Source of the DNA: Mytilus edulis
Lineage: Eukaryota
DNA: 64,000 nt
Direction of reading: 5' to 3'
NCBI RefSeq assembly: GCF_963676685.1
Contig: NC_092349.1
Coordinates: 80,724,001-80,788,000, forward strand
The notes under the pieces are model-generated. The model saw only the letters and a program-made list of their open reading frames with translations. It had not been told where the DNA came from and did not search any database. Both the position numbers and the translations under genes were made by a program. Below, in pieces: positions 1 to 55,030 of the stretch. The number at the start of each line of letters is the position of its first letter. The stretch's first letter is position 1.

Positions 1-546
1 CTCACACCTCTTATTGAAGCACACCTTTCATTCAAACCAGAATTTGGTTGGCCAAGATCGGGAGCCAAATGGCCATCTTTTACCAAACATGAAGAGATAA
101 AAGCTGAAGGAATTCACCAAGTTGCTAAAGATCCACTGTATTGGTCTTTTTCATTTGTAACATGTGAAAAGAAGTTGCTAGATGGTATTGACTCAAATGG
201 AACTTGCCGTAAAAAAAGTCAACGCATAATGAAGAAACTTCGAGAAGTGTGGTGTCCAAAAGGAACAAAACAAGAACTAAATTCGTACCATCTTAAAAAC
301 ATTTTATTTTGGGAGTGCGAAAATCATCCATACGATAGTAAATGGACCAATGATCAGCTTTCTGTAAGAGTTGAGTCAATGTGTTACTTAATCATTCAAT
401 GTATACAGCGAGGGAACTTGCCTTTATACTTCCATACAGGTGTTAATTTGTTGGAGAATAAAGACGAAAATGTCCTCAGCCAGGTTGCATTGAATATATT
501 GAGGTTTTTGAAAAACCCGGAACAGTATTTAATTCAAAATTTCTAA
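1..546 (+). CDS. cGAS-like receptor (cGLR, Mab-21 domain nucleotidyltransferase), 3' part; 5' end lies outside the window
   Basis: Frame 1 is open from base 1 (LTPLIEAHLSFKPEFGWPRS...EGIHQVAKDPLYWSFSF...SYHLKNILFWECE...LPLYFHTGVNLL) to TAA at 544-546. It is collinear with the C-terminal half of the intact copy at 31776. Confidence 0.88.
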   Translation, partial: LTPLIEAHLSFKPEFGWPRSGAKWPSFTKHEEIKAEGIHQVAKDPLYWSFSFVTCEKKLLDGIDSNGTCRKKSQRIMKKLREVWCPKGTKQELNSYHLKNILFWECENHPYDSKWTNDQLSVRVESMCYLIIQCIQRGNLPLYFHTGVNLLENKDENVLSQVALNILRFLKNPEQYLIQNF

Positions 547-1023
547 TGAATCCCTTGTATACATTTATATTGACATATATGACTGACTAGTATTGTCTAC
601 TGCATCTTATCAACTGCAGAGAAATAAATACTTGGTTAACATCTCAAAAATTATTATTATTTAATGTTTTTCACGGTAAAGAAGAATTTTAACTGCAACA
701 AAAACAGCTTATAAATTTAAATGTCCGGGTATGGACAATGCTCCAGACTTATGTCTGGGTTTGATGCACAAACGATGAGCACTGCATGCTTCAGACAATA
801 AAAATGTCTCTAAGAAGATGTTTCTACCATTCCAAAGTATCAGTCACGATGATACCGTCTATCTACCCACTTTCTTCATACGTGACCTTTGTATTATGAT
901 GATGACTTTTAAGTTACATGTTGATCTCTTCCAGATTGTTATTAGCAAAAGCAATCGGGAACATAACAACGATTTTTCTGTTGTAATTATTTTTTCAATT
1001 AAACTTTAATTTTGCCTTCGGCT

Positions 1024-1050
1024 AACTTTTACTTTCACTTTCAGTTTTCC
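1024..1050 (-). promoter_or_regulatory. ISRE/IRF-binding element-like motif
   Basis: Minus strand reads GGAAAACTGAAAGTGAAAGTAAAAGTT, i.e. tandem GAAA(N2)GAAA cores. A homologous cassette follows several paralogs. Confidence 0.6.
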
Positions 1051-3185: not shown

Positions 3186-3648
3186 ACCTCTTATTGAAGT
3201 ATATGTTTCATTAACCAACGAAGGAATACATATTGTTGCTAAAGATCCGTTTTATTGGTCATTGTCATCTGTCATGAGTGAAAAGATTTCACGAGATGGC
3301 ATTGACTCCAATGGAACATGCCGTCAAAAAAGTCAACGGATAATGAAAAAACTACGAGAAAGTTGGTGTCCAAAAGGAACTAACAAGTAATTACCTCGTA
3401 ACATCTAAAAAAGATTCTCTTCTGGGAATGTGAAAATCGGCCATCTGATACAGAATTGACTAATAGACAGCTTTCTGTAAGAATTGAGTCTGTGTTACTT
3501 ACTCATACAACATATCTAGCGTAGCAACCTGCCTGTCTATTTTCATACAGGAGTTAATTTGCTGTAGAATAAGGATAGAGACGTTCTTGACCAGGTTGTG
3601 CTGAACAGTTTTAGGTTTTAAAAAAATTCTGACCATTACTTACTTAAA
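3186..3648 (+). pseudogene. cGLR C-terminal fragment (degenerate)
   Basis: PLIE...EGIHIVAKDPFYWSLS...RIMKKLRESWCPKGT, then frameshifts and stops through ILFWECENRPSD...GVNLL. The N-terminal half is absent. Confidence 0.85.
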
Positions 3649-4124
3649 AATTTATCGTGAATAAATGATTCTTTTTCAATTGTCATATGTTATTTCAATT
3701 GCCTGTTTATCTAGCTCTAGCAAAAAAAACGAGGATCTCAGTGTTAAAGTTAAACTTTCGAAGGATTGAATTTTATTTTGGTTGGTTTTGCCTCAACATG
3801 GGCAAACAATGTTAATCTACACCTGATTCACTCAAAATATTCCTCTAATCAAAATGAAATGAAACAGACAGAACTAAAAATACACAAAAAAGTTTTCTGA
3901 AATTTGGAATACCTTATTTCCTGATATATGTATAAAGTGTAGATTCAGTAAATTTTGCGATAATTTGGCTTTTGATTCGTTTTGGCTTTCACATACAGTT
4001 TTACTTTCATTTCAAGTTTTCTAAAATCTAGACGAAACTTTCAATATTTTCTTTAGTTGCTGTAAACATCTGTTATATATTTTATTCCTTGTCTTTATTC
4101 ACAGCAGCCGTAAATATTGTTCGC

Positions 4125-9860: not shown

Positions 9861-10989
9861 ATGAATAACATCATGTTGAATAAATTTTATAAAGACGATG
9901 TGAAAATTACAAAACTAGAAATTAAGCACAATGCTGATTTTGTGATTCCTCTTGTCAATAGCATTTTGCAGAACGTTCATGAATTAGACGAGCGGTCTAA
10001 ATCACAACCATTACATGTTGGTAGTTACTACTCTCGTCTTAAAGTGTCTCGAGCAGACGAGTTTGACTATAGCGTAGTGTTGGATGTAGGATCATCTCTC
10101 TCTTGGATTCCCACAACGCCGGTTCATTATGGATATCATAGAAACAAAGAAGTGGATTGTACATCGATTCCACTGTCAACACCACCAGTAGGAAAATGCT
10201 TAACACAGATTCCAGAACAGATACAAAGCTGGAATAATAAAGGTTTAAATAACGGACCGGCATGTTTGTCAATTGATTATTATACCTATAAAAGTTAAAA
10301 GATGGTTTAAGCAACTCGTCATTAAAGCTATAGATCAACTCGGAATATGGGACATCGTCAAAGTGCAAGGATTACCCGAGTCTCCTGCAACTACTTTGAC
10401 GATTTGCCATTCCAAAATTGCTGGAGGAACAATTAGCGTAGATCTCACACCCATAATCGAAGGAAAGCTATCATTCAAACCAAGGTTTGGTTGGCCTAGG
10501 GCGGGGGCAAAATGGCCATCCGATACCAAGATTCAGGAGATAAAAGATGAAGGAATACATATTGTTGCCAAAGATCCATATTATTGGTCTTTATCATTCG
10601 TCGCATGTGAAAAGAAATTGATAGCTGGCATTGATTCAGATGGATCTTGTCGTAAAAAGAGTCAATGCATTATGAAAAAACTTCGAGAAATGTGGTGTCC
10701 GAAAGAAACAAAACAGGAACTTACTTCGTACCATCTTAAAAATATTCTTTTCTGGGAATGTGAAAATCATCCAGATAATAAAGAATGGAATAAAGATCAG
10801 CTTGCTGTAAGAATTGAGTCCATGTGTAATCTACTCATACAACAAATACGATGTGGCAACCTACCTCTATACTTCCATACAGGGGTCAATTTGTTTGAGA
10901 ATAAGGACAAAGACGTTCTTGGCCAGGTTGCGCACAATATTTTAAGGTTTGTGAGGGCGCCACATCATTACTTATATAAATACATGTAG
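9861..10989 (+). pseudogene. Full-length cGLR with a single frameshift
   Basis: ORFs 9861-10298 and 10273-10989 together give the whole protein. About 5 nt are missing at ~10275-10281 (GATTATT versus GATGATCACATC in paralogs). All catalytic motifs (VGSYY, DEFD, SVDL) are intact. Confidence 0.85.
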
Positions 10990-12233
10990 TGAATTTTTTA
11001 TATAATGTAGATTGGTACCTCATATTTACATTATCTTATACCAAAATACTGATTCTGAGAGAATGTTAGAAATGCTCTTTTTTGTATATTTATAACAGAA
11101 ACGTAACATTAACTTGAATAAATTATATATAAGCGTATTCGGATTCTAGTGTTCATGATCACTCGGTTCTTAAGTGCACTTTTTGACTATTGTCATAACG
11201 AAATGATGAGTATCATACACTTTGTTAAAAGCAAGTGTTGAAAATAAAATCATAACGGTACTGAAATTTAAAAGGGAAAGTCCCTAATCAAACACAATAT
11301 AAAAAGCCCAAACATATGAAAAGAATGGGTAACACTTGTAACAGGCATTTTCATATTTAGAAAACGGTGGTTTACACCTAATTTTATAGCTAGCTAACCC
11401 TATCACTTGTATGACGGTCGCATCAAATTCCATTATACTGACAACAATGTTTGAACAAAACAAACAGATATAATAGGTAAAAATGTCAAAGTTACAGCAG
11501 TCAACAGCGTGTTATAATCTTAATCACTATAAAAAAAAATTTTTATTATGTAACAAAAAAAGCAACAAAAAAAAAAGCACATTTGCAAAAATTAAAGACC
11601 AGAATACAAAAAGTTTTGAAACAGCACAATGATACAATAACGGGTTAAAGTACAGAGCCACGTCATATGTATCCAAAAACACAAAAAAGCAAATAGACAA
11701 AGAACATTAACAAAAATGAAAGACGAGATCTCAATATCCATTCTCAATTTTAAAAATAAAACAATCATCATAGAACAATAACACAATGACGGGATGTATA
11801 AGTGCACAGACACGTCAACTGTTTCAAACATATTAATCAGTCAAAGTTTAATGTCTCTTCAGTGATGTTATGGATCGAATAGAATTTGGAATATAATTAA
11901 CCTGACTTAAAGATAGACTCTTGAAACCTTCGGTGGCCGGGTGTTACCCTTCAACGTCAGTTTCAATCTAGCGTCGTACTACAGTACATGATATATAAGG
12001 CATGAAGATGTTATTTTACAAATCAGCTAAATTATCTATAGTAAAGGATCCTACAAATTAATGTAAGAAACAGTTACAGAAATAATATATTTATAAGTAC
12101 GTCTGAACCAGTGACAACTCTACAACAGATTTATCCATCGGATCACCAGCAGTGATGGTTATACACGGCTGTGTACATTCAGTATATATAATTCATCTTA
12201 ACATCAACCCAACAATGTTAGATCTGTAAATAA

Positions 12234-12344
12234 ATCCATATTATTGGTCTTTATCATTCGTCGCATGTGAAAAGAAATTGATAGCTGGCATCGATTCAGA
12301 TGGATCTTGTCGTAAAAAGAGTCAACGTATTATGAAAAAACTTC
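12234..12344 (+). pseudogene. 111-bp captured cGLR fragment
   Basis: Matches 10574-10684 with 3 mismatches (PYYWSLSFVACEKKLIAGIDSDGSCRKKSQRIMKKL). Confidence 0.9.
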
Positions 12345-20396: not shown

Positions 20397-21509
20397 ATGG
20401 ATATAAATACAATGTTTAATAATTTTTATGTCAAAATGTCAAGAAACGAAACAAGCCAGAACGTTCATTTTGTGACGCCTCTTGTGCAAGACATTTTGCA
20501 GTACGTTCATGAATGGGACAAACGGTTTCAAATACAGACACTAAATGTTGGGAGTTATTATTTAAAGTGTCTCGAGCAGACGAATTTGATTATAGTGTAG
20601 TCTTAGAAGTTGGATCATCTCTAGATTGATGTATTGGAACACCATCTTATTAAGGATATAATGGTAGCAACGAAGTTGTTCGTTCATTGATTCCACTTCC
20701 GACAGCACCAACAGGACAATGCGTTACAGAGGTTCTAGGACTGACAAAAAAGATGGAATAATGAAGGTTTAAATGAAGGACCGGCTTGTTTGACACTTGA
20801 TAATCACATTATACCTATACGAGTGAAAAGAAGGTTCAAATCACTCGTCAGTGAAGCTATTAACCGACCAGACACTCGTCAGTATGTTGACGCAAGACGA
20901 TCATCCGAGTCACCTGCTACTACACTTATAACTTGCCATCCTAACATTGTCGGAGATCAAGTTAGTGTAAATCTTGCACCTCTTATAAAATCACATGCTT
21001 CTTTCAAATCAGAGTTTGAATGGCCTCGCCATGGGGGCCAGATGACCATCCCGTACAAAGATTGAAGAGATAAAAGCTGAAGGAATACATTTAGTTGCTA
21101 AACATCCATGTTACTGGTCTTTGTCATTTGTCATGTGCGAAAAGATATTGATAAATTGCATTGACTCGAATGGAACTTGCCGTAAAAAAAGTCAACGAAT
21201 AATGAAGAAACTTAGAGAAATGTGGTGTCCAAAAGGAACAAAACAAGAATTAACTTCATATCATCTTAAAAATATTCTTTTCTGGGAATGTGAAAGTCAT
21301 CCATTTGATTCAGAATGGGATAATGACAAGCTTTCTGAAAGAATTTCTTCAATGTGTTACCGGATCATAGAACACATACGATGTGGCAACCTGCCTCTCT
21401 ATTTTCATGAATGAGTCAATTTGTTGAAACATAGGGGCAAACACGATCTTCCCAAGGTTGAACAAAACATTTTGAGGTTTTGAATACTCCCGAACATTAT
21501 CTAATTTAG
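20397..21509 (+). pseudogene. cGLR pseudogene (multiple stops and frameshifts, third catalytic Asp->Asn)
   Basis: MDINTMFNNFY start. Homology is split across ORFs 20337, 20790 and 21121, with internal TGA/TAA codons. SVNLAP replaces SVDL. It ends PEHYLI*. Confidence 0.9.
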
Positions 21510-21970
21510 AAAATGATGTAAATTTTTAATATAATTTATATTGACAGATTTAAAAAAATGCTACACTAGGTTATTCTGTTTTATTCTCATTTTCAAATAA
21601 CCAATTTTTGTAAAATAAATGTATAAACATAAATTCAATCGATTTCTTAATTGTCTGAAAATACATAATTAAAATTATCATGATATGATATTTGTATGTC
21701 TGTTTTATCGAGCACTGCTTCGAGGTAAATATTTAAATTAAATCTTGATAATGTCTTGTTATGTATATGAAAAGTAAAAACATTAAACCATCATGGCACG
21801 ACTTCTGTATAAATTACCTGACATCATATCTGTCAGATTCTCGTCAGAAACAAAATGTACAACAATGGTCCACACAATACTTTGATTATACAAGTACATG
21901 GTTTATTCGTTGTTAAACATGTCAAAGACATTTCGGTCATACCAAAAAAAGCCAAAAAACTATTGAATAT

Positions 21971-24502: not shown

Positions 24503-25628
24503 ATGGATAATGCAATGTTAAATAGATTTTATGAAGACAATGTGAAAATGACAAAAGACGAAACAAGCCAGAACATTGAAATTGTTATTCCTCTCGTCAA
24601 TGATATTTTGCAGTACGTTCACGAAAGAGACGGGCGGTTTAAAAAAACAACCATTGAATGTTGGTAGTTACTATTCCCGTCTAAAAGTGTCTCGAGCGGA
24701 CGAGTTTGACTATAGCGTAGTATTAGATATAGGATCATCTCTCGTTTGGGGTACCGTCACACCGGCTTATTATGGATATAACGAAAACAAAGAAGTGGTT
24801 CGTAAATCGATCTCACTACCTTTAGCTCCAACTGGAAAATCCTTTACACAGATTACAGGACTGACACAAAAATGGGATAATGAACGTTTAAATGAAGGAC
24901 CGGCTTGTTTGACAATTGGTGACCACCTTATACCTATAAAAGTAAAAAGGAGGTTTAAGACACTAGTTAGTGAAGCTGTGAATAGACCAAGAATACGCCA
25001 ACATGTCGACGCGCAAAGATTATCCGAATCACCTGCCGCTACTTTGACAATTCGTCATCCCAAAATTGCAGGAGAAACAATAAGCGTTGATCTCGCACCT
25101 CTTATTGAGGGACATCTTCCATTCAAACCAGAGTTTGGCTGGCCTAGACAAGGAGCCAGATGGCCGTCCTGGATGAAGATTGAGGAAATCAAAGCCGAAG
25201 GAATACACGAAGTTGCTAAAGATCCATTTCACTGGTCACTGTCATTTGTCATGTGCGAAAACAAATTGGTGGATGGAATGGATTCGAATGGAACTTGCCG
25301 TAAAAAGAGTCAACGGATAATGAAAAAACTTCGAGAAATGTGGTGTCCGAAAGGAACAAAACAAGAAATAACTTCGTACCATCTTAAAAACATTTTATTT
25401 TGGGAAGGTGAAAATCACCCAAACGATAGTGAATGGACTAATGACCAGCTTTCTGTGAGAATAGCGTCAATGTGTTACCTGCTCATAGGATACATACAGC
25501 GTGGCAACCTGCCTTTGTATTTCCATACAGGGGTCAATTTATTGATGAATAAGGACAGAGACGTTCTTACCCAGGTTGAACAGAACATATTCAGGTTTTT
25601 GAATAATCCCGAGCAATATCTAATTTAG
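24503..25628 (+). CDS. cGLR, full length (374 aa) apart from a +1 frameshift in an A7 run; intact gene with a sequence error, or a young pseudogene
   Basis: ATG 24503 MDNAMLNRFYEDNVKM...DGRFKK. The A7 at 24641-24647 sits where paralogs have 6 nt. The frame then continues open to TAG at 25628 with all motifs. Confidence 0.8.
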
Positions 25629-28350: not shown

Positions 28351-28548
28351 ATATTTCTGGGAATGCAAATATCATCCATCAGAGTGGACTATTGACCAGT
28401 TTTCTGTTAGAGTTGATTCAATTCTTTATCTGATCATACAAAACATACAGCGAGGCAACCTTCTTACAGGGGGCAATTTGCTAGAGAATAATTGAAAATG
28501 TTCTAGACCGGGTTGAACAAACAATGTTAATCCGTTTTACAACCCTAG
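28351..28548 (+). pseudogene. cGLR C-terminal relic
   Basis: TTCTGGGAATGC...GAGTGGACTATTGACCAG...CATACAGCGAGGCAACCTT...GGCAATTTGCTAGAGAATAA (FWEC..EWT.DQ..IQRGNL..NLLEN), degenerate. Confidence 0.8.
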
Positions 28549-29405: not shown

Positions 29406-29660
29406 GCTTGTCTGAGTATTAATGCCGGTATTTTTTCCTAAGTATAAAAAAGAGAAATGCAAATCATTCATCAGTGAGGCTATTAATCGGCCTCGAATAC
29501 ATCGATTTGCTGATATAAAAGGCTACACTGAGAATTATTTACCATCCAGAAAACAAGGTTGGACAGCAAGCATTGATTAAGCTCCATAAATTGAGGCACA
29601 TTTCCTACCCAGACACGAGTTCGGTTAACCAAGATCAGGAGCCAAATGTCATTCTCAAAC
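29406..29660 (+). pseudogene. cGLR central relic
   Basis: AAATCATTCATCAGTGAGGCTATTAATCGGCCTCGAATA...GAGTTCGGTTAACCAAGATCAGGAGCCAAATG (KS..SEAINRPRI...EFG*PRSGAK), degenerate. Confidence 0.7.
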
Positions 29661-31775: not shown

Positions 31776-32903
31776 ATGGATATTAATAAAATGTTAAATA
31801 ATTTTTATGAAGGCAACGTAAAAATGTCAAGAAACGAAACAAGACAGAACGTTAATGTTGTGATGCCTCTTGTGAATGACATTTTGCGGTACGTTCATGA
31901 AAAGGACAAACGGTTTCAAGTACAGCCATTAAATGTCGGGAGTTACTATTCCCACCTTAAAGTGTCTCGAGCTGACGAATTTGATTATAGTGTAGTCTTA
32001 GATGTTGGATCATCTCTGGATTGGGGTATTGGGACGCCATCTTATTATGGATATAATGGAAGCAACGAATTGGTTCTTTCATGGATTCCACTGCCATCAC
32101 CACCCCCAGGAAAATGCCTTATAGAGGTTGGAGGACTGACACAAAGATGGAATAATGAAGGTTTAAATGAAGGACCGGCTTGTTTGACAATTGATGATCA
32201 CATCATACCTATACGAGTTAAAAGAAGGTTTAAAGTACTCGTTAGTGAAGCTGTGAATCGACCACACATATATCAGTTTGTCGACGCAAGGCGATTATCC
32301 GAGTCACCTGCTACTACACTGATAATAAGCCATCCTAACATTGTAGGAGATACAATAAGTGTAGATCTTACACCTCTCATTAAATCACATGCTTCATTTC
32401 AACCAGAGTTTGGGTGGCCTAGATCAGGAGCCATATGGCCATCTTGTATAAAGATTCAAGAGATAATAGCTGAAGGAATCCACGGAGTTGCCAAAGATCC
32501 ATTGTACTGGTCTTTGTCATTTGTCATGTGCGAAAAGAAATTGCTAGATGGCATTGACTCGAATGGAACTTGTCGTAAAAAAAGTCAACGGATAATGAAA
32601 AAAATACGTGAAAGTTGGTGTCCAAAAGGAACTAAACAAGTAATTACTTCGTACCATCTACAAAATATTCTTTTCTGGGAATGTGAAAGTCGCCCATCTG
32701 ATGAAGAATGGACAAATGAACAGCTTTCTATAAGAATTGAGTCCATGTGTCACTTGCTCATACAAAATATTCAGCGTGGCAACCTGCCACTGTATTTCCA
32801 TACAGGAGTCAATTTGCTGGAGAATAAGGACAGGGACGTACTTGACAAGGTTGTACAGAACATTTACCGGTTTTTGAATAATCCCGAACATTATCTAATT
32901 TAA
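31776..32903 (+). CDS. cGAS-like receptor (cGLR; Mab-21 domain cyclic dinucleotide synthase-like), intact, 375 aa
   Basis: Uninterrupted ORF with the hG[S]x(9-13)EhD motif (VGSYYSHLKVSRADEFD), third acidic residue SVDL, WSLSF..CEK, SYHL and LPLYF..GVNLL, all matching cGAS/Mab-21 landmarks. No zinc-ribbon insertion. Confidence 0.95.
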   Translation: MDINKMLNNFYEGNVKMSRNETRQNVNVVMPLVNDILRYVHEKDKRFQVQPLNVGSYYSHLKVSRADEFDYSVVLDVGSSLDWGIGTPSYYGYNGSNELVLSWIPLPSPPPGKCLIEVGGLTQRWNNEGLNEGPACLTIDDHIIPIRVKRRFKVLVSEAVNRPHIYQFVDARRLSESPATTLIISHPNIVGDTISVDLTPLIKSHASFQPEFGWPRSGAIWPSCIKIQEIIAEGIHGVAKDPLYWSLSFVMCEKKLLDGIDSNGTCRKKSQRIMKKIRESWCPKGTKQVITSYHLQNILFWECESRPSDEEWTNEQLSIRIESMCHLLIQNIQRGNLPLYFHTGVNLLENKDRDVLDKVVQNIYRFLNNPEHYLI

Positions 32904-33204: not shown

Positions 33205-33258
33205 AACTTTCACTTTCATTAACAGTTTTCATAAATCTGATGAAAAGTAAAAGTAAAC
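33205..33258. promoter_or_regulatory. ISRE-like cassette
   Basis: AACTTTCACTTTCATTAACAGTTTTCATAAATCTGATGAAAAGTAAAAGT, ~300 bp after the stop codon. Confidence 0.55.
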
Positions 33259-33477
33259 TGAACAGTATAAATCGGTCGTACTATTTATCAATTCTCTAAC
33301 AAATCACATAAAGTTTAATTAACTGAAGGCATTGCAGAATCCAGAATAATATGAAACAGTTCATTTCAAATTAATTTGACCACAATCGGCAACATGAAAT
33401 TATAACAACAAACACATAATTAAACAAACAACAAAAGAACAATACTGATGAAAATAATATCTCGATGTATACACTAT

Positions 33478-34638: not shown

Positions 34639-34790
34639 GCAAAGAAAGATGCAAATCACTCGTAAGTGAGGCTGTTAACCGGCCACGTATACGTCAATTT
34701 GCTGATATTAAAGCTGATATATGTCTAAATTCCCGGCTGTTACACTGACAATTATAAACCACCAGGAACCAAAATGGCCTTCTTAAACTG
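34639..34790 (+). pseudogene. cGLR central relic (paralog of the 29406 relic)
   Basis: AAATCACTCGTAAGTGAGGCTGTTAACCGGCCACGTATACGTCAATTTGCTGAT (KSLVSEAVNRPRIRQFAD), then degenerate. Confidence 0.75.
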
Positions 34791-36833: not shown

Positions 36834-37961
36834 ATGGATATAAATACAATGTTAAATAATTTGTATGAAGACAATGTGAAAATTTCTAGAAACGAAACAA
36901 GCCAGAACGTTAATGTTGGGATGCCTCTTGTGAATGACATTTTGCGGTACGTTCACGAAAGGGACAAACGTTTTCAAATATAGCCATTAAATGTCGGGAG
37001 TTACTATTCCCACCTTAAAGTGTCTCGAGCAGACGAATTTGATTATAGTGTAGTCTTAGATGTAGGATCATCTCTGGATTGGGGTATCGCAACGCCATCT
37101 TATTATGGATATAATGGAAGCAACGAATTGGTTCTTTCATGGATTCCACTGCCTTCACCACCCCCAGGAAAATGCCTTATAGAGGTTGGAGGACTGACAC
37201 AAAGATGGAATAATGAAGGTTTAAATGACGGACCAGCTTGTTTGACAATTGATGATCACATCATACCTATATCAGTGAAAAGATGGTTTAAAGCACTCGT
37301 CAGTGAAGCTATTAACCGACCACACATACGTCAGTATGTCGATGCAAAACGATTATCCGAGTCACCTGCTACTGCACTAATAATTTGCCATCCTTACATT
37401 GTAGGAGATCAAGTAAGTGTAGATCTTACACCGCTTATAAAATCACATGATTCATTCAAACCAGAGTTTGAGTGGCCTCGCCCGGGAGCAAGATGGCCAT
37501 TCCGTGCAATGATTGAAGAGATAATAGCTGAAGGAATACATTTAGTTGCTAAACATCCATGTTACTGGTCTATGTCATTTGTCATGTGCGAAAAGCTATT
37601 GGTAGATTGCATTGACTCGAATGGAACTTGCCGTAAAAAGGGTCAAAGGATAATGAAGAAACTTAGAGAAATGTGGTGTCCAAAAGGAACAAAACAAGAA
37701 TTAGCTTCATATCATCTTAAAAATATTCTTTTCTGGGAATGTGAAAATCATCCATATGATTCAGAATGGGATAATGACAAGCTTTCTGAAAGAATTGGGT
37801 CAATGTGTTACCGGATCATAGAACACATACGATGTGGCAACCTGCCTCTCTATTTTCATACAGGAGTCAATTTGTTGGAGAATAAGGACAGAGACATTCT
37901 TTGCCAGGTTGTACAGAACATTCAAATGTTTTTGAGTTCGCCGGAACAAAACTTACTATAA
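36834..37961 (+). pseudogene. Full-length cGLR with one premature TAG
   Basis: ATG 36834 is in frame with ORF 37020-37961. The only frame lesion is TAG at 36981-36983, where the 31776 copy has CAG (Gln). Confidence 0.9.
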
Positions 37962-39425: not shown

Positions 39426-40526
39426 ATGGATAATACAATGTTAAATAAATTGTATAAAGACAATGTTAAAATGACAAGAAACGAAAGAAAACAGAATGTT
39501 GAATTTGTGATTTCTATCGTCAATCAAATTTTCCAGAACATCCACGAAAAAGACAGGCGGTTTAAAACACAAATGCTGCATTTTGGTAGTTACTATTCTC
39601 GTCTAAAAGTGTCCCGAACAGACGAGTTTGACTATAGTGGTGTGTTATATGTAGACTTTCGGAAAACCAGCTTGTTATGAATATAATGAAAACAAAAAAG
39701 TGGTTAGTACGTCGATTTCTCTCCCGTCACCTGCTGCAGGAAAATCTTTTACACAGATGCCAGAGCTCATACAAAAGTGGAACAATGAACGTTTAAACGA
39801 CAGCTTGTTTGACAATTGGTGACCACATTGTACCTATAAAAGTTATAAGAAGATTTAAAGCACTCGTCAGTGAAGCTGTAAACCGACCGCAAATACGACA
39901 ATATGTCGAAGTGGAAAACTATCCGAATCACCTGCCGTTACTTTAACGATAAAACATACCACAATTACAACAGCAGTAATCAGTGTAGATCTCTCACCTC
40001 TAATTGAAGCACACCTTCAATTCAAACCAGAATTTGGTTGACCGAGATTCGGAGTTAACTGGCCATCGTGGACTAAAACGAACGAAATTGAAAGAGAAGG
40101 AATTCATCAAGTTGCTAAAGATCCATTGTATTGGTCAATGTCGTTCGTAACATGTGAAAAGAAGTTGCTAGATGGCATTGACTAATATGGTACTTGTCGT
40201 AAAAAAGTCAACGAATAATGAAGAAACTTAGAGAAATATGGTGTCCGAAAGGAACAAAACAGGAACTTACTTCGTATCATCTTAAAAATATTCTTTTCTG
40301 GGAATGTGAAAATCATCCATATGATTCAGAGTGGACTAATGACAAGCTTTCTGTAAGAGTTGAGTCAATGTGTTATCTGACCATACAACACATACAGCGA
40401 GGTAAACTGCCCTTATACTTCCAGGGGTAAATTTGCTGGAGAATAAGGACAAAAATGTTCTATAAAGGCAGGTTGAACAGAACATTTTGAAATTTTTGAA
40501 AGACCTAGGACATAATATTATTTTGA
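39426..40526 (+). pseudogene. cGLR pseudogene (several deletions and stops)
   Basis: MDNTMLNKLYKDNVKM...FGSYY...DEFD, deletion and stop at ~39655-39680, GGTTGACCG (W->*), TAA at ~40183, frameshifts. The C-terminal ORF is 40218-40430. Confidence 0.9.
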
Positions 40527-41390
40527 ATCATTATTTCCAATAATTAAAAGTATTTGTTATTTACATTATATAAAATGGTACTTTGCCGTATCGTTATACG
40601 AAATTAACTGTTGAAAGTGACCTGTGTAGTGAACAGTTAAGACACAAAAAAAATGAAAAACCCAAACAATCCATATTGCTTATAAACTGGGGTTGTAATT
40701 TAAAACGATAGAATTGATTAAAAATTTGCCAGATAATGTTTATATCTTTAAAAAAACAAATACAAAAGAAAGGGTCAAGGAGCTTTTTCTAAACTTTAGG
40801 TTATGCAAAATTGTCACAATTGGTACAGACAATAAATAATTAAAAAAAAACATTATTATATGGTTTCAGAAAACAAAATGAAAACAGTTAGAACTCGTTT
40901 CTTGCTTCTAAATATATAAATTTATTACACATACCTTTATATAAGTTTCAATACGGGAGCTCATCCCCAGTTTTGGCTGAGGTTCGTGCTGGTTGGGCTT
41001 TAGTTTTATGTGTTTTGTTTTATGTGCCTTTTTGTAATGTTTTTTTTGTCAGTTTGTGTTCGATTTATAAGTTTTTATTTTCGTAGAATATCTTTCGCCT
41101 CTCTCTCTTATCTGTAGTGGAAAATAAGAACAATTGGACATCATTTGTATAAACTACTGTTTTTGCAACATCGTGTTGATAAGAATAAGAACACTTTTAA
41201 TAAGTGAAACCAAGTAAAAATATTAAAGGATATTTAAGATAAAATTAAAACACAAAACTTGAAATAGGGGGTCTTTATCCAAAGCGTTTGTGTGCGAAAC
41301 TTATCTCTTTCCTTATCTGCATGATGTAATTTATTTTTTATCATTGATTTTAAAATACAGCGAGTTCGGTATTTGTAATATCTTACTATT

Positions 41391-46995: not shown

Positions 46996-48110
46996 ATGGA
47001 TAATACAATGTTGGAGACATTTTATAAAAACAATGTTAAATTGACAAAAGATGAAACAAAGGAGATTCTTGATTTTGTCAAACCTATCATAGATTATATT
47101 GTTCAGTACGTCCATGAGAAGGACAAGCGGTTTAAACTTCACCAACTGAATGTCGTGAGTTACTATTCCCGTCTTAAAGTGTCTCGAGCAGACGAGTTTG
47201 ATTATAGCATTGTGTTGGACTCAGAACCATATTGGGGTTGGACAACCGTGACACCGGCTTATTATAAATTCGATGGGAATAAGGAGGTGGTTCAATCATT
47301 AAGTCCACTACCGCCAGCACCCGTTGGGGAATACGTTACTAACTTTTCAGCGACTATACCCGAGTGGAATAAAAAACGTTTAAATGAGGGACCTGCTTGC
47401 TTGACAATTGGTTATCACATAATACCACTGAAAGTTAAAAAAAGATTTAAAGCACTAGTCAGTGAAACTGTTAAGCAACCATGTATACGTCAATATGTTG
47501 ATGCAAAACGATTATCTGAGTCACCTGCCGTGACATTGACGATAGCTGATCCCAATGTTGCAGCAGAACCAATAAGTGTAGACCTCGCACCTCTTATTGA
47601 AGCACACCTTCCATTCAGACCAGAGTTTAATTGGCATAGACCAGGGGTCGGATGGCCATCTAGTACACAGATTAAAGATTTAAAAGATGAAGGTATACAC
47701 TTGGTTGCTAAAGATCCTGAATATTGGTCTTTATCATTCGTCACATGTGAAAAAAATTGTTAGAAAGCACGGAAACAACGGGAACATGCCGAAATAAAAG
47801 TCATCGAATAATGAAGAAACTGCGTGAAATTTGGTGTCCAAAAGGAACAAAACAGGTTCTCACCTCGTACCATATCAAAAACATTTATTTCTGGGAATGT
47901 GAATATCAGCCGGATGAATCGGATTGGACTAAAGAACAACTAGCTGTCAGAGTTGAGTCTATGTGTGAATTGCTTATTAAATTCATAGGGAATTGGAACC
48001 TTCCTGTATACTTCCACACAGGGATCAATTTGTTAAAGAATAAGGACAAACAAGTGTTTGGCAATGTTCAACAGGATATTCGTATTTTTTTGGAAAACCC
48101 GGAAGACTTT
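46996..48110 (+). CDS. Divergent cGLR; -1 frameshift in an A7 run, G->V in the GS motif, 3' end runs into the assembly gap
   Basis: ORFs 46996-47763 and 47757-gap join if one A is added at 47750-47756 (CEKKLLES...). It has LNVVSYY in place of LNVGSYY. Confidence 0.75.
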
Positions 48111-48267
48111 NNNNNNNNNNNNNNNNNNNNNNNNNNNNNNNNNNNNNNNNNNNNNNNNNNNNNNNNNNNNNNNNNNNNNNNNNNNNNNNNNNNNNNNNNN
48201 NNNNNNNNNNNNNNNNNNNNNNNNNNNNNNNNNNNNNNNNNNNNNNNNNNNNNNNNNNNNNNNNNNN
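48111..48267. other. Assembly gap (157 N)
   Basis: Run of N. Confidence 1.
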
Positions 48268-48481: not shown

Positions 48482-48532
48482 CATATGATCATCATAAAAC
48501 TTATCCAGAAGAGTGTTCAACTTGCGCATCAT
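48482..48532 (-). pseudogene. N-terminal stub of a third minus-strand cGLR
   Basis: Minus strand encodes MMRKLNTLLDKFYDDHM (compare MDNTLLNRFYDDHV). The upstream region 48545-48760 matches 55050-55260. Confidence 0.75.
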
Positions 48533-50094
48533 TTACTTCTAAGAGTAAAGGAAGTTTGACAAATAGATTTGCAGCTCAGTTTCGATTTAATTGAATAGAA
48601 ATATGTGGAAGTTTCCAGTCTATATTTAGATATGAAAAAATACAGGTATTTGTAACGGTAGTAACATATTTAATTTTTTCCGGAAAATCAACTAAATATG
48701 TTTCATTCTTTTGCAATTTAAATTTATATGACCTAGTATTAAATGTGGATCCTATTTGATTGAAGGCAGTTCTAGTGTTAAAATTCAAACTCCGGTTAGT
48801 TGATTATATATTTGATTTGAGTTCACCACGAGATAATAAAGCAAAGAGTTTTATTGATTAAATTGTTAGATATGCATAATTGAGCAAGTTTCGAGCTAAA
48901 TTTAAATGATAGTATGAGCTCCAGCGAAAGTTCTAGTTACAGTTACATTGTGAGTTTCAATATGAATTTGGGTTACAATTCTAGTAAAGCCTTAAAAGAT
49001 AACTTCAAAATAATACTACCTTCAGTATCAAAAAGACGTTCATAGCAGAAACAAGTGCTGGCAACAGATGTTCAATGTCAATCTATCTTTTCACACATTA
49101 ATATAAGTATAGATATTGCCAGTGTTTGTGTTGTTCAGTGGTTTTTTTTATTATTAAAGTGCCTCTTTAACTGTTGATTGTCTGCTGGTTTTGTTTTGTC
49201 ATGATGTTTTTCTAGTCTTTTTTATGTAGCAATTGACTCTTTGCTCTCTTATCTCCTTATTATAATTTATAATTAAACATTTTACTCTCATGCCTTTCTT
49301 AATCTCTTCATTGATAAAATTAGTAATCATACGGGTTTCCTAGCCACAACACCACGTTCAATCAACACTTTTTTTGCAGGAAAATGGCAGTTGTTATCTG
49401 ATAGTTATTTTATGTGTGTGTTGCATTGTCGTTTTTGTTTGTTTGTTGCATTTCAATGTTTTTGTTGTTTCGTTGGTTTCTACCCGGATTTGTTTTTTCT
49501 GGATCGATTGATGACTTTTAAACAGCGGTATACTACTGTTACCTTTATTTTAACTCTTAAAGCAAAATCAGATTTTAATATTCCTTGCATGACCATTTTC
49601 GTCATACAAAAATAGCTCCTCTTTCATTCTAGCTTTTATTTATTAAATTATTTGTCAAAACAAATTTCTAAAAACACAAAATTTAAAGTTTTGATTTATA
49701 TTACATTCGAGATGTTAGGTACTGCGTTTTATTTACTTGAGTTTAGATAAACACTAACTAGATGGTCAATGCTCCGAATCTAGTATACTATAATTGATAT
49801 CTTTTGTTTTCAATTTGTATCGACCTTTTTTTTAAAGAAATTATTGAATTCATACTAGCCAGTTAGTCGCAACATCCTCATGGAAAAGACAGACATATGT
49901 TTTAAAGCCTTCTGAACCTTTTATGATTTACTCTTGTGTAATAGTTTTCTTATATTTGATACGTTTCCCTCAGTTTTAGTTTGTAACCCAGATTTGTTTT
50001 TTCTCTATCAATTTGTGAATTTCGAACAGGGGTATACTACTGTTGACTTTATTTATTCAAATATCAAGAACATAATCACCTAGATCTGTGGTGT

Positions 50095-51267
50095 TCATTT
50101 TCCACTTTTTGATGGTTTTATTTTGTAGTATTTCGCCTGAATGTAGCTAACAGGTTTCCTCAAAATCTTTTGAATGTTTTCTTTAACTTGATTAAGCACG
50201 TCAATTTTCTTTGTTGAGAATAAATTCACTGGAGGATGAAAATATTGAGGTAAATTGTTTTTACGTATGCATTCACATAGGTTTTCAGACATTGAAATTT
50301 TCCTTGTAGCCACATGATCTTCTGACCATACAGAATCATGAAGATATTCCTCACACTACCAGAAAAGGATATTTAATAAATGGTAAGATGTCAATTCTTG
50401 TTTCATGCTTTTTGGACACCACTCTTCCTTCAGCTTTTTCACAATTTTTTCAGACATCTTCCTACAAGTTGGATTATCGTCATTATTATCAATACCTTCT
50501 AGTAATTTCTTTTCACAACTTGCAAATGAATATGTCCAATAAAATTTATGCTTTGCAATATTATTAAATCCCATTTCTTTAATTTCATCAACTTTTTTCT
50601 TTAGTGGCCATTGACTTTCAGGTCTTGGCCATCCGAGAAATTCAACGAAAGTACTACGTGACTCTATTAAAGGAGTTAAATCAACACTGACGTCACCTTT
50701 TGCAGGTTTGGTCAGAATTATTGTGAGCGTTGTTGCTGGTGAATCCGTCAATCTGTTGGCATCAACATTTTCTATATCAAGTTTATTTACGGCTTCAGTT
50801 ACAAGCGCTTTGAATCTTTTTTTAACCATTATTGGTATAATGTCGTCATCAAAAGTAAGACACGCTTTGTCGTCATTGATACCATCTCTGTTCCATTTTT
50901 GAATGATATTATCCGAAAGAGATATTAATCCTTGCCCGATTGGTGGGTTTGCTTCTGCTACCGATTTTCTGACTAGCTGATCTTGTTCATTGATTTCATA
51001 AATATAGCTGGAATCATCATTGCACCAGTCAAGAGGCGGTACATCCAATACTACGCTATAATCAAATTCATCTGCTTTCGATACTTTAAGATGTGTGTAA
51101 TAAGATCCTACACGTAGCGGTTTCCTTTTAAATCGTCTGTCCTTTTTATGTACATGATCTAGAATTTTTCTTACGATACGCATCACCTCCTTTATGTTTC
51201 GTGCAGTCTCGACTTTATTCATTTGGACATGGTCACCATAAAACTTATTCAGAAGTGTGTAATCCAT
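50095..51267 (-). pseudogene. Full-length cGLR (390 codons) with one premature TAG
   Basis: ORF 50356-51267 ends FW-TAG where paralogs have FWE. The same frame continues CEEYLHDSVWSEDHVATRK...LPQYFHPPVNLF to the stop at 50095. Confidence 0.88.
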
Positions 51268-53896
51268 TTTGAATTAAAATTGCGCAATGATTGACTGTCG
51301 GTTTTGTAGTTCATTTAAGCCATTTAGTGGAAGTTTTTGGTCTATATTTAGATGTTTAAATACAGGCACTTTTTTACCTCTTGCCTATTTTCGGAAAATC
51401 AACTGAATGTTTTTTGCAAGTTGGATTAATGTTGACTTCTTTGAGCTTATTGTTCGTTTTAATAAAGGGGGGAGATGACGGGGTTTCCTTTGTTGTTATT
51501 ATCATATAACACATGATCGGTTTCGTTTATTGAAATGCATATTTTTCTTTTAAAGATGAAAAACGAACACAGAAAAGAACCTTCATAGTTGCTAGGCATA
51601 TTATGTGATACTCCAGATACTAATTTTGTCTACATTAGACTTATTAGTGGCCCTCAAATCATACAGTTACAAAGCCAAATCAAAATGTGAACCTAAAGAG
51701 CTTTAAAAATCAGAAGGGAAATGAAAGGGAACCAAATACGTGCAAGGCCTGTTGCTAGAAAAACCTTAGCACATCGATTAATTAAACATTTTATAAACTG
51801 TAAATTAAAAAATAAATACATGTATACAAATGACAATTCAAATCCACATAAAAGTGCTTACTATGGGACTGTTGATATTTTACTGGACGAAACTTCTATC
51901 AACAGCAATCTGATCAAAATACTTGTCTACAACAGTTTATTGGAAGATACCAAGACCTTGTTGATAAATATTCAGTGTCATTTTCAGACATGATACACTA
52001 TGGTCTTGAAGTATAGATTCCAGGTACTGATGTCGTTTAGCATCAAAATAACGTGTTATAGTTTTCGTTTATTTGTCTTTGTAAATTATTACTTTTACTA
52101 TTTAAACTATTTTTGGAAGTGACGTGGCTCGATACTTGTAGAACCCATCATTATGTTATTGTGCTGTGGTAAATTTTAGTATTCTTGTCTTTAGATTTTG
52201 CTAATAGTAAGCCTTTTTTGGTTTTCCTTGTTGACAAATTTGTTTGTTTTTAAAGTAGAGTGTGATTTCAACACAATCTTGACTGCTGTACCCCTATTTT
52301 GACATGTTTACTTGTAACGTCTGTTTGCTTTATTCACACATCGTTGTCAATATAACGGAATAGTATGCGAATATCATACAAGTGAGAGGTTCAGTTAGCT
52401 ATAAAACCAGGTGTTAATTTCAGGTTTCTCCTACAGTTTAGTTTATATTTTTTAGTACATATTTCGAAATATAGGGTGAATAATTGAGCTTATCATGCGC
52501 AAACATTAGAGTTCGAGTTACAGCGGGAGTTTTAGTTTTGATCCGAGCTATAATTTCAAAGTTCAATCCTGGTATCTTTCATGAATTTTTTCACAACCAC
52601 TGGGTAGATTCCACTGCTGGTGGAGTTTTATTCCCAGAGTATATCACCAGCTTAGTAGCCATCTTAGTAGTCGAGCGTCACTAATGAGTCTAGCGCAAAT
52701 ATAAATTTTTATTCCTGGTATCTATCATGAGTATATTTAAAACAGATGTTCCAGTGTAAATAATTGCTAACTAAGCAATCATCTTTTTAGTCTAATTAAA
52801 TATTGTTTATTTGAAACCTTAAATTGTTATACAAAACCGATTACTGCGTGTAAAATTTGTATTCAAACATGAGAGGCGGAATATACCAACAGCATAGTCT
52901 CATAAGTCTGAAACAAACTTGTAACCCCGCCGCAATTTTGCGCCTGTCCCAAGTCAGGAACCTCTGGCCTTTGTTAGTCTTGTATGATTTTTAATTTTAG
53001 TTTCTTGTGTATAATTCGAACTTTAGTATGACGTCCATTATTACTGTACTAGTATACATATTTTAGGGGCCAACTGAAGGACACCTACAGGTGCGGGAAT
53101 TCTCGCTACATTGAAGACCAATTGGTGGTCTTCGGCTGTTGTCTGCTATATGGTCGGGTTGTTGTCGCTTTGACACATTCCCCATTTCCTTTCTCAATTT
53201 TATTGTCCTGCCATGGCAAAAAAAAAAACAACGACCGAAAAGCAAACAACAGTCGATCAAACAGAATATAGAACATTAAAGACTGAGAAACATGAACCCT
53301 ATCAAAAACTGGGGTGATCACAGGTGATCCGGAAGGGAAATCAGATCTTGCTCCACATGTGAGTGACAACCGTCGTGTTGCTCATGTGAGTATAAACCTG
53401 GTGATAAACCATTATTAGAGAGAAAGAAGACGGGATTGTTGTTACAACAATTGGAACATATCCGTTGCCATATTTGACACGGATTTTCTTAAGAAAGCTA
53501 ACAATTTATGACTTTATAATGGAAGTTATTTCTTTGAAGCATAAAAAAAAACCTAGAACTTTAAGTTACGCAGTATGAATTTAGATTCACTGACTTGTTA
53601 TGAGCAACACAATTGTGTACACATGTAACATCCCGTGATATAGATATCTATATTTCAATAAAGTTCATTCCATTCTTTGCAATACATCCTTGCTCAATTG
53701 AAAACTGGACTCCTATTAATGGTCGGAAGATCCAAATAGTTGATATAGAAGACTTCATCAATAAAAATATAATAATTATCACATATTGAAAGTTAGTGCA
53801 AGTAAATTTGTTTAAATACCAGGGAAACGTCTTCAAGATATGGAGTGTCCATTTGCCACAACACTATATCTACTATTTGAAATGTAAAATTTATTG

Positions 53897-55030
53897 TCAG
53901 TAATGCCTCTGCAAGTAGCTGACAGGATCCTGCAAAAACTTTTGAATGTTTCTTGCAACTTGATGAAGTACAGCAATGTCCTTTGTTGAAAATAAATTCA
54001 CTCGAGGATGAAAATATTGGGGTACATTTTCCTCCCGTATACATTTAAGCAAACGGTCACACATTGACCTTAGCCTAGTAGCCAGTTTATCATCTGACCA
54101 TTCATAATCATGTGGGTGGTCCTCACATTCCCAAAACAGGATATTCTTCAAATGGTAAGATGTCAAGTCTTGCTTCATTCCTACTGGACACCATGATTCT
54201 TTCAGCTTTTTCATGATCCTTTGCGATTTCTTCCGGCATGTTCCATTAGCATCAATACCGTCCAACAATTCCTTTTCACAGCTTGCATAAGAATATGTCC
54301 AATAAAATGGATCTTTTGCGATATCATTAAATCCCATGGACTTTAATTTCTCAACTTTTTCATCAGAGGGCCACTGTGCTTCTGGTCTTGGCCACCTGAA
54401 GTCCTCTTTAAAAGGCGTGCATGATTCTATCAGAGGCGTTAAATCGACGCTTACAGAATCGCCTGCAATTTTTGGATGAGTAATTCTGAGCGTTGTCGCT
54501 GGTGAATCTGATAATCTTTTAGCATCAACATATTTGCGAATGTGTTGTCGATTAACTGCTTCACCCACAAGTGATTTAAATCTGCGTTTAACCTTTATAG
54601 GTACTATATCGTCATCAATTGTAAGACAGGCTGGGCCGTCATTGATCCCCTCTCTCTTCCATTTAGGTATGGTACTTGAAAGATATATAAAACCTTTCCC
54701 AGTTGGTGGGTCTGGTAATGTTAAACTTTTTCTGACTACTTCATTGTTCTCGTCGAATCCATAATTATGAGATGAGCTTTTACTACTCCAAACAAGGTGT
54801 GGCGTATCCAAAACAACGCTAAAATCAAACTCATCCGCTCTCGACACTTTCAGATGTGTATAATAGCTTCCGACATTCAATGGTTGACATTTGAATCGTC
54901 GGTCCTTGCTGTGTACATACTGCAGAATATCCTCGACTATAGGCATCACTATCTTTATGTTTTGTCTTGTTTCATCTCTAATCATTTTCACGTGATCATC
55001 ATAAAACCTATTCAGAAGTGTGTTGTCCAT
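53897..55030 (-). CDS. cGAS-like receptor (cGLR; Mab-21 domain), intact, 377 aa
   Basis: Uninterrupted ORF with VGSYYTHLKVSRADEFD, SVDL, WTYSY..CEK, TSYHLKN and VPQYFHPRVNLF. Confidence 0.95.
   Translation of the reverse strand: MDNTLLNRFYDDHVKMIRDETRQNIKIVMPIVEDILQYVHSKDRRFKCQPLNVGSYYTHLKVSRADEFDFSVVLDTPHLVWSSKSSSHNYGFDENNEVVRKSLTLPDPPTGKGFIYLSSTIPKWKREGINDGPACLTIDDDIVPIKVKRRFKSLVGEAVNRQHIRKYVDAKRLSDSPATTLRITHPKIAGDSVSVDLTPLIESCTPFKEDFRWPRPEAQWPSDEKVEKLKSMGFNDIAKDPFYWTYSYASCEKELLDGIDANGTCRKKSQRIMKKLKESWCPVGMKQDLTSYHLKNILFWECEDHPHDYEWSDDKLATRLRSMCDRLLKCIREENVPQYFHPRVNLFSTKDIAVLHQVARNIQKFLQDPVSYLQRHY

What the first reader, a model, noticed from the sequence alone, without database searches (positions are those of the whole stretch)
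1..55030. Rapid birth-and-death array of stand-alone cGAS-like receptors
Seen: 11 full or near-full paralogs and 6 fragments of a ~375-aa Mab-21/cGAS-fold gene in 55 kb, in two convergent subfamilies (+ group and - group), with only two uninterrupted ORFs. Known: cGLRs are nucleic-acid-sensing cyclic dinucleotide synthases upstream of STING and are expanded in bivalves. Inference: this is a fast-evolving antiviral receptor locus whose subfamily is probably uncharacterised biochemically, and it may show presence/absence variation between individuals.
Basis: partly seen in the sequence, partly recalled or inferred. Interest (0 to 1): 0.8.

Follow-up and report, generated by a model that had tools for sequence, protein, structure and literature searches.

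The report
Mussel cGAS-like receptor gene array
This is a real 61-kb tandem array of intronless cGAS-like receptor (Mab-21 fold) genes on Mytilus edulis chromosome 6, about a third intact and the rest broken. It is one more example of the bivalve cGLR expansion already catalogued in 2023, not a new kind of system.

Summary
The window carries 11 near-full copies and several fragments of a ~375-aa Mab-21/cGAS-fold gene: a + strand block, then a − strand block after the N gap.

The array starts 6.1 kb upstream of the window. It has four intact genes (A, B, H, M), not two.

- **Broken copies:** five have one lesion each (E, G, I, K, L), two have several (F, J) and one has a large deletion (C).
- **Active site:** the catalytic GS / E-x-D / D residues are invariant in 41 homologues and align with cGAS's catalytic residues.
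- **Fold:** the best solved-structure match is the coral receptor Sp-cGLR1.
- **Zinc thumb:** absent.

The "rapid birth" reading is only partly supported. Whole-gene dS is at least 0.21 and ω is 0.15–0.5. However, the copies are significant mosaics, and the youngest exchanged tract has dS of about 0.06.

Transcript-like contigs cover H alone. Presence/absence variation is suggested but not shown.

Li et al. 2023 already list a 99.7%-identical M. galloprovincialis protein and an M. edulis M-like protein among animal cGLRs. Ligand and product remain untested.

The scan also noted other cGLR arrays elsewhere in this genome.

The parts
1..537 (+). Copy B, 3' part of an intact 378-aa gene whose ATG lies 590 bp upstream of the window
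   Evidence: 100% match to called protein P0004
1809..2498 (+). Copy C, pseudogene: lacks the first ~34 codons and has a 333-nt internal deletion (codons ~234-344)
3187..3651 (+). Fragment D, C-terminal part with stops
9861..10992 (+). Copy E, single lesion: 5-nt deletion at codon 141
12221..12343 (+). Fragment (codons ~236-277)
20397..21512 (+). Copy F, pseudogene: -7, +1, +1, -1 frameshifts and catalytic D197N
24503..25628 (+). Copy G, single lesion: one extra A in an A7 run at codon 48; otherwise under constraint (ω 0.16 against A and B)
28349..28489 (+). Fragment (codons ~298-350)
29431..29643 (+). Weak fragment (codons ~143-219, 36% identity)
31776..32903 (+). Copy H, intact 375-aa cGLR; catalytic G55-S56, E68, D70, D197; modelled at pLDDT 91.9; covered by transcript-like contigs
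34641..34706 (+). Very short weak fragment (22 aa)
36834..37961 (+). Copy I, single lesion: TAG at codon 49; mosaic of an H-like 5' part and an F-like 3' part
39426..40528 (+). Copy J, pseudogene with five frameshifting deletions
46996..48110 (+). Copy K, -1 in an A7 run at codon 254 and G55V in the GS motif; its last 2-3 codons are lost in the gap
48111..48267 (.). Assembly gap at the junction of the + and − blocks; continuity not demonstrable
48486..48744 (-). 5' stub of a − group copy: promoter-like flank plus the first ~38 nt of the coding sequence
50125..51267 (-). Copy L, single lesion: TAG at codon 304
53897..55030 (-). Copy M, intact 377-aa cGLR of the − group

Best explanation
This is a tandem cluster of intronless, single-domain cGAS-like receptor (cGLR) genes in Mytilus edulis, at chr 6 positions 80,717,892-80,779,030.

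The four intact members (A, B, H, M) most likely work as cytosolic pattern-recognition enzymes:
1. A ligand binds.
2. The nucleotidyltransferase cage, with catalytic residues G55-S56, E68, D70 and D197, makes a cyclic (di)nucleotide.
3. One of the mussel's STING proteins reads that signal.

The cluster turns over in three ways: segmental duplication of gene plus flanks, exchange of gene segments between copies (gene conversion or unequal crossing-over), and pseudogenisation.

Shown here: the fold, the catalytic residues, the array anatomy, the lesions, the mosaicism, purifying selection, and the presence of STING in the genome.

Inferred, not shown: enzymatic activity, the ligand, the product, the link to STING, and an antiviral role.
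For: - Domains: Mab-21 and Mab-21_C are both above cut-off.
- Sequence match to solved structures: the best is 8gjy 'cGAS-like receptor 1' (E 1e-26 for H, 1e-36 for M), ahead of MAB21L1 and cGAS.
- Fold: the AF2 model has pLDDT 91.9 and pTM 0.89. The top Foldseek hit is Sp-cGLR1 of S. pistillata, with TM 0.75-0.82.
- Catalytic residues: G55, E68, D70 and D197 are invariant, and S56 is at least 90% conserved, in 41 homologues.
- These residues align with cGAS 'GSYYEH..NEFD' and 'SVDI', including the two residues mutated in the catalytically dead structure 4kb6.
- All four intact copies keep them. Pseudogenes K (G55V) and F (D197N) have lost one each.
- Constraint: pairwise ω is 0.15-0.5.
- The H allele in another organism label differs at 7 synonymous and 4 non-synonymous sites, with no stops.
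- Expression: contigs of run X15 cover 31792-33111 only (the H coding sequence plus 208 nt) and none of the unique intergenic DNA.
- Partner: STING_LBD exons are present in the genome.
- Literature: Li et al. count 55 cGLR and 5 STING genes in M. edulis. They list VDI50356.1 (99.7% identical to A) and CAG2257887.1 (M-like) among cGLRs.
- Duplication unit: it includes 125-500 bp upstream and 270-700 bp downstream of the gene.
- Mosaicism: the max-chi2 test gives P<=0.001 for I versus (H|F) and for H versus (I|A).
Against: - No biochemical data exist for any member.
- The residue before GS is V, not the Q/T of the published motif.
- The distance from the E-x-D strand to the third acidic residue is 124 residues, against the 50-90 in Li et al.'s motif.
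- H has a near-neutral calculated pI of 7.15. Li et al. report pI above 8.5 for nucleic-acid-sensing cGLRs.
- One genuine RNA-seq run (X24, one fifth of it read) shows almost no reads on H.
- X15 is RNA only by the tool's guess.
- MAB21L1 is the second-best PDB match.
Confidence: 0.7

Rival explanations
1. These are Mab21L-type proteins, as the RefSeq name 'protein mab-21-like 3' implies. They would act without nucleotide synthesis, for example in development, and not as immune receptors.
For: RefSeq names them 'mab-21-like 3'. Human MAB21L1 is the second-best PDB hit by both sequence and fold.
Against: - MAB21L1 lacks the GS motif where these proteins have it; it reads 'DN...EFE' at the aligned positions.
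- All catalytic residues are invariant across the subfamily.
- A 13-copy array with nine dead members is not how a conserved developmental gene behaves.
- Li et al. state that Mab21L1/2/3 lack a predicted functional active site, yet they list members of this subfamily among cGLRs.
Confidence: 0.08
2. The genes are active nucleotidyltransferases, but nucleic acids are not their ligand and/or STING is not their output. They would be orphan cGLRs, like human MB21D2 or the acidic coral cGLRs.
For: - Calculated pI ranges from 7.15 (H) to 8.9 (A). Net charge of codons 76-135 ranges from +1 to -7 between copies.
- Relative to cGAS and Sp-cGLR1 there are 20-30 extra residues in that most variable region.
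- Li et al. argue that some cGLRs sense non-nucleic-acid ligands.
Against: A, B and M have pI above 8.5, which is Li et al.'s range for dsDNA/dsRNA sensors. The closest solved relative, Sp-cGLR1, is dsRNA-activated.
Confidence: 0.17
3. Part of the apparent 'death' is not fixed gene loss. Some single-lesion copies, G above all, would be assembly homopolymer errors or null alleles still segregating in the population, so that real individuals carry more working copies.
For: - The frameshifts of G and K are both ±1 in A7 runs.
- G has no other defect and shows ω 0.16 against A and B.
- Nearest relatives of G, K and L are full-length gene models in other Mytilus assemblies: P0003/5/7 (83-86% identical to G), P0032 and P0041. 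E's nearest, P0030, clusters with a 423-aa M. trossulus model (P0111), but only at 91 support on long branches.
Against: - K also carries G55V.
- E has a 5-nt deletion outside any homopolymer.
- F, J and C have several lesions each.
Confidence: 0.25

Closest known systems
Sp-cGLR1 of Stylophora pistillata (PDB 8GJY; Li et al. 2023)
   Same: Best match by sequence (E 1e-36 for M) and by fold (TM 0.75-0.82). Same GS...DEFD...SVDL active site, same size, no zinc thumb, no fused domain.
   Different: Only 27% identical. The mussel proteins carry about 21 extra residues in codons 77-135. The ligand (dsRNA) and product (3'3'-cUA) of Sp-cGLR1 cannot be transferred at this distance.
Vertebrate cGAS
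   Same: Same fold, and the catalytic G-S, E, D, D residues align.
   Different: No zinc thumb: the loop is 9 residues shorter and lacks the H/C ligands. There is no N-terminal tail. About 30 extra residues follow the catalytic strand. Identity is about 20%.
Human MAB21L1 (PDB 5EOG/5EOM)
   Same: Second-best PDB match, with strong similarity in the C-terminal helix bundle.
   Different: MAB21L1 has no GS motif at the aligned position. It is a single conserved developmental gene, not a turnover-prone array.
Bivalve cGLR radiation (Li et al. 2023, PMC9980059)
   Same: This is the same phenomenon. The paper counts 55 cGLRs in M. edulis, 218 in M. galloprovincialis and more than 200 in Dreissena and C. 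virginica. VDI50356.1 and CAG2257887.1 of this subfamily are in its tables.
   Different: The paper, as far as it is held, does not describe genomic arrays, pseudogenes or mosaicism. Of five exact motifs of this subfamily, the four most specific are absent from its screened set, and the fifth occurs only in two unrelated entries (one labelled N. vectensis mab21-like 2).

Membership tests
cGLR (criteria of Li et al. 2023) | Catalytic residues of the motif h[QT]GS ... [DE]h[DE]h ... h[DE]h | tested here: met
   G55-S56, E68-F-D70-Y and V-D197-L are present. G55, E68, D70 and D197 are invariant in 41 homologues, and they align with the cGAS catalytic residues. The residue before GS is V, not Q/T; Sp-cGLR1 has K there.
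cGLR (criteria of Li et al. 2023) | Motif spacings X8-20 and X50-90 | tested here: inconclusive
   The first spacing is 11 residues, which fits. The second is 124 residues, outside 50-90, because of extra residues in codons ~76-135. Li et al. nevertheless list subfamily members.
cGLR (criteria of Li et al. 2023) | Homology across both the NTase core and the C-terminal helix bundle | tested here: met
   PF03281 (61-75 bits) and PF20266 (80-87 bits), each against a cut-off of 24.1 bits.
cGLR (criteria of Li et al. 2023) | Predicted structural homology to known cGLR / CD-NTase enzymes | tested here: met
   AF2 pLDDT 91.9. Foldseek hits: 8gjy at E 1.4e-20, and cGAS at TM 0.72-0.77 by query length, 0.75-0.83 by target length.
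cGLR (functional definition) | [quoted passage not shown] | not testable with these tools
   This needs recombinant protein and NTP assays.
cGLR-STING pathway | A STING receptor encoded in the same genome | tested here: met
   PF15009 exon hits above cut-off on C3 and C8. Li et al. Table S5 gives 5 STING genes for M. edulis.
cGAS proper | Zinc-thumb insertion (H..C..CC..C) before the 'CRK' helix | tested here: not met
   There is a 9-residue gap against porcine cGAS at this loop and no H/C ligands.
Mab21L1/2 developmental proteins | No GS motif; single conserved orthologue | tested here: not met
   GS is present, and the locus is a 13-copy array with pseudogenes. The whole-protein E-value is worse for MAB21L1 than for Sp-cGLR1.

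The most novel reading that the evidence does not exclude
The 20-30 extra residues after the catalytic strand (codons ~76-135) could be a swappable recognition cassette. This is the most variable part of the protein, it differs in charge between copies, and it lies inside a recent exchange tract between H and I (nt 181-420 are 96-98% identical). Recombination within the array, together with segregating null alleles, would then give each mussel its own set of cGLR specificities. That set might include non-nucleic-acid ligands for near-neutral members such as H.
Probability: 0.15. Interest if true: 0.6.

Novelty: new member of a known kind. Interest (0 to 1): 0.3.

Why it matters
Bivalves hold the largest known cGLR repertoires, and almost none of these receptors has a known ligand or product. 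This locus offers four intact, small, intronless paralogues for biochemical work: A, B, H and M. They differ mainly in one segment and in charge. Their dead relatives and recombinant mosaics sit alongside, so the locus is a compact place to ask how cGLR specificity diversifies. It is not a new kind of system. Members of the subfamily are already in the published cGLR catalogue, and the genes are annotated in RefSeq.

Tried and rejected
I could not fetch the homologous arrays of M. trossulus, M. galloprovincialis, M. californianus or the second M. edulis assembly. Synteny and presence/absence variation were therefore judged from proteins only.
- **Haplotype duplication** is rejected: copies are at most 88.2% identical, and the whole genome holds this subfamily only here and in a 41-45% identical mini-cluster on C10.
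- **Retroposition** as the copying mechanism is rejected, because homology extends into both flanks.
- **A splice site at 31792**, where the X15 contig starts, is rejected: there is no AG and the context is AT-rich.
- **Positive selection** was looked for with 30-codon sliding windows. None exceeds ω 0.63. No codon-model program was available, and mosaicism would confound one.
- **Run X24** (true RNA-seq) gave almost nothing on H.
- **Literature searches** for mussel or bivalve cGLR arrays found only Li et al..
PDB E-values and motifs were used instead.
- **The large protein searches** were not spent, as the family was not in doubt.
- **The N gap** was not filled or looked up.
Full report
**Where the window lies.** The window is chromosome-scale contig C6, positions 80,724,001-80,788,000, of a 1.37-Gb genome. 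The 374-aa protein of the copy just upstream of the window is identical to XP_071180721.1, 'protein mab-21-like 3 [Mytilus edulis]'. That protein sits on a contig of 93,901,275 bp, which is the length of C6. The genome is therefore the M. edulis RefSeq assembly.

**The observation.** Only Mab-21-like ORFs reach 150 aa in the window. I mapped the copies with tblastn using the two intact ORFs, the same search on the window plus flanks, three-frame reading and a DNA alignment.

- The array holds thirteen near-full copies in all. Eleven lie in the window, ten whole and B in part.
- The window also holds five or six fragments and a 5' stub.
- Intact copies: A (window coordinates -6108 to -4984), B (-590 to 543), H (31776-32903) and M (53897-55030, − strand).
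- Single lesions:
  - E has a 5-nt deletion at codon 141.
  - G has one extra A in an A7 run at codon 48.
  - I has TAG at codon 49.
  - K has one base missing in an A7 run at codon 254.
  - L has TAG at codon 304.
- Several lesions: F and J. C lacks its 5' end and 333 nt internally.

The array is longer, at about 61 kb, and it has four intact genes, not two.

No two copies are more than 88.2% identical in their coding sequence. The subfamily occurs nowhere else in the genome except in a 41-45% identical mini-cluster on C10. Haplotype duplication in the assembly is therefore excluded.

**The gap.**
- K's frame enters the N run (48111-48267) at codon 373 of about 375.
- The sequence to the right of the gap has no homology to the 3' flanks of the other + copies.
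- It does contain, 219 bp further on, a − strand stub of the M/L promoter region plus the first ~38 nt of coding sequence (48486-48744).
- Continuity therefore cannot be shown.
- K's status does not depend on the gap.
- The + and − blocks meet exactly at this join, so their convergent orientation is only as good as the join.
- In an older M. edulis assembly, an A-like model (CAG2257890.1) and an M-like model (CAG2257887.1) lie on one contig three accession numbers apart. This supports adjacency of the two blocks but says nothing about their orientation.

**What the genes are.**
- H and M carry Mab-21 and Mab-21_C domains above cut-off.
- Among solved structures, the best sequence match is 8gjy 'cGAS-like receptor 1' (E 2.7e-26 for H, 9.9e-37 for M). 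MAB21L1 and cGAS follow.
- An AlphaFold2 model of H, built on 41 homologues, has pLDDT 91.9 and pTM 0.89.
- Foldseek ranks 8gjy first; it is Sp-cGLR1 of the coral S. pistillata. MAB21L1 and many cGAS structures come next.
- G55, E68, D70 and D197 are invariant in the 41 homologues, and S56 is nearly so.
- In the HMMER alignments these residues lie opposite cGAS 'GSYYEH...NEFD' and 'SVDI'. E and D fall on the two residues replaced in the catalytically dead porcine cGAS structure 4kb6, where 'NEFD' reads 'NQFN'.
- MAB21L1 has no GS at that place.
- The zinc thumb of cGAS is absent, and the loop is nine residues shorter.
- Relative to cGAS and Sp-cGLR1, the mussel proteins have 20-30 extra residues between codons ~76 and 135. 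This puts 124 residues between the second and third motif elements, against the 50-90 in the published motif.
- The genome encodes STING ligand-binding domains.

**What is already published.** Li et al. 2023 (PMC9980059) defined cGLRs by the active-site motif, by two-lobe homology and by predicted structure. They reported extreme radiations in bivalves.

- Their supplement counts 55 cGLR and 5 STING genes in M. edulis, and 218 and 9 in M. galloprovincialis.
- Its domain table lists VDI50356.1, which is 99.7% identical to copy A, and CAG2257887.1, which is 93% identical to M.
- Of five exact motifs of this subfamily, the four most specific do not occur in the sequences of their cloned screening set. 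The fifth, 'LFWECE', matches only two unrelated entries, one of them labelled N. vectensis mab21-like 2. The subfamily is therefore catalogued but probably not assayed.
- Searches for papers on cGLR arrays in bivalves returned only this work.
- A separate paper reports from its title and abstract that a Mytilus coruscus STING responds to c-di-GMP (PMC11190208).

**How the array evolves.**
- Homology between copies extends 125-500 bp upstream and 270-700 bp downstream of the coding sequence. The copies therefore arose by segmental duplication, not by retroposition.
- Pairwise dN/dS is 0.15-0.5. It is lowest among A, B and G, and highest among pairs involving E, F and I.
- Whole-gene dS ranges from 0.21 (F-I) to saturation against the − block.
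- In 30-codon windows, ω peaks at 0.47-0.63 in codons 76-135 and at 0.35-0.44 in the N-terminal helix. It never exceeds 1.
- The copies are mosaics:
  - I matches H at 92-98% over nt 1-480 and F at 92-98% over nt 661-1020.
  - H matches A at 92-96% over nt 721-1080 but only at 68-72% over nt 241-420.
  - Max-chi-square tests give P<=0.001 for both triplets.
- Tract-level dS is 0.058 for F-I (codons 221-340), 0.147 for H-I (codons 1-150) and 0.24 for A-H (codons 241-360).
- For scale, the H allele in a DNA run labelled as a second organism differs from the window at about 1.4% of sites.
- Exchange between copies is thus moderately recent. Whole new copies are not young.
- In a protein tree, copies K, L, M, J and B, and the F+I pair, each group with particular proteins of M. 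trossulus or of the older M. edulis assembly. The + and − blocks form separate, well-supported clades.
- Nearest relatives of several copies that are dead here are full-length gene models elsewhere:
  - P0041 for L (87% identical)
  - P0032 for K
  - P0111 for E (indirectly: E pairs, at 91 support on long branches, with P0030, which clusters with P0111)
  - P0003, P0005 and P0007 near G

This pattern is birth-and-death in which loss and recombination are well documented and 'rapid birth' is not.

**Expression and variation.** One 6-kb stretch (31200-37199) was laid on four runs.

- *X15* is RNA only by the tool's guess. Its contigs cover 31792-32195 and 32168-33111, that is, the H coding sequence from 16 nt after the ATG to 208 nt past the stop, collinear with the genome.
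- X15 has zero depth on all unique intergenic bins and on copy I. This is the pattern of an unspliced H transcript.
- *X24* is a true RNA-seq run, one fifth of which was read. It has almost no reads on H. Expression is therefore low or conditional.
- *X2* is DNA with the same organism label as the window. Its listed contig pieces match without differences.
- *X4* is DNA with a second organism label. It carries H with 7 synonymous and 4 non-synonymous differences and no stops.
- Among the five other named Mytilus protein sets retrieved, H has no counterpart above about 80% identity.
- Several family proteins retrieved from the older M. edulis assembly find only 78-94% matches in this genome; one, the A-like P0059, matches at 99.6%.
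- These results fit strongly divergent or content-variable haplotypes, as known for Mytilus (PMC7653742, by title). They do not prove presence/absence variation.
- The lesions of G and K lie in A7 runs, and I could not check them with reads. K also has G55V, so it is probably truly dead. G has no other defect.

**Charge.** Calculated pI is 8.93 for A, 8.80 for B, 8.56 for M and 7.15 for H. Li et al. give a pI above 8.5 for nucleic-acid-sensing cGLRs. The net charge of codons 76-135 ranges from +1 to -7 among copies. The ligand could therefore differ between paralogues. This is inference only.

**Surroundings.** The nearest other coding sequences found are:
- a PDZ-domain exon about 21 kb upstream of the window
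- a reverse-transcriptase zinc-finger fragment about 13 kb upstream
- a PNMA/gag-like fragment at 61505-62008

The spacers between copies are full of very high-copy repeats. One of them carries a type I hammerhead ribozyme.

**Verdict.**
- The cGLR identification is supported.
- The evolutionary reading is partly supported.
- The thing is a new member of a known, published kind, bordering on already known. It is of modest interest, mainly as a compact set of candidates for biochemistry.

Noticed in passing
window 44274-44949 (hammerhead at 44309-44352, − strand); related sequence at 33478-34182: A type I hammerhead ribozyme (Rfam RF00163, 36.1 bits, above the gathering score) sits inside a 355-bp unit repeated 1.9 times at 97% identity. 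The same repeat family occurs 3' of copy H.
   Followed up: partly
window 31200-31600, 33400-34200, 34800-35000, 35600-36000, 36400-36600: Very high-copy interspersed repeats fill the spacers between cGLR copies. Summed contig word depth is 1e5-2e6 there, against about 100 on unique DNA, and many contigs join across them.
   Followed up: no
window 32661 (codon 296 of H): The reference has C (Gln). Most depth in the DNA runs and all of it in the transcript-like contigs has A (Lys), which is the residue of the other copies with a residue there except L (Leu). The reference H allele is a minority variant at this site.
   Followed up: partly
window 4478-5163: A tandem repeat of a 133-bp unit, 5.2 copies at 75% identity, lies between fragment D and copy E.
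   Followed up: no
window 62981-63641: An AT-rich satellite built on a 21-bp unit containing the palindrome-like 'AAGATATCTT'. About 26 copies, with higher-order periods of 42, 63, 111 and 174 bp.
   Followed up: no
window 61505-62008 (+): An ORF fragment with a PNMA / retrotransposon gag-like domain (PF14893, 27.4 bits).
   Followed up: partly
G000:C10:51865118-51900956: A second, smaller cluster of the same broad subfamily: three hits at 41-45% identity to H, two of them with open frames of 387 and 510 aa.
   Followed up: no
G000 C13:1.1-7.2 Mb and C8:51-56 and 83-86 Mb: Dozens of distant Mab-21 hits lie inside ~650-aa open frames. These are large arrays of multi-domain cGLR-like genes, in line with other first-reader notes on this genome.
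   Followed up: no
JGI/ENA metagenome proteins P0012-P0029: A clade of 15 clusters, 62-66% identical to H, comes from 'metagenome' contigs up to 743 kb long. These are presumably host DNA of another mytilid in symbiosis or gill metagenomes. The family would then be expanded there too.
   Followed up: no
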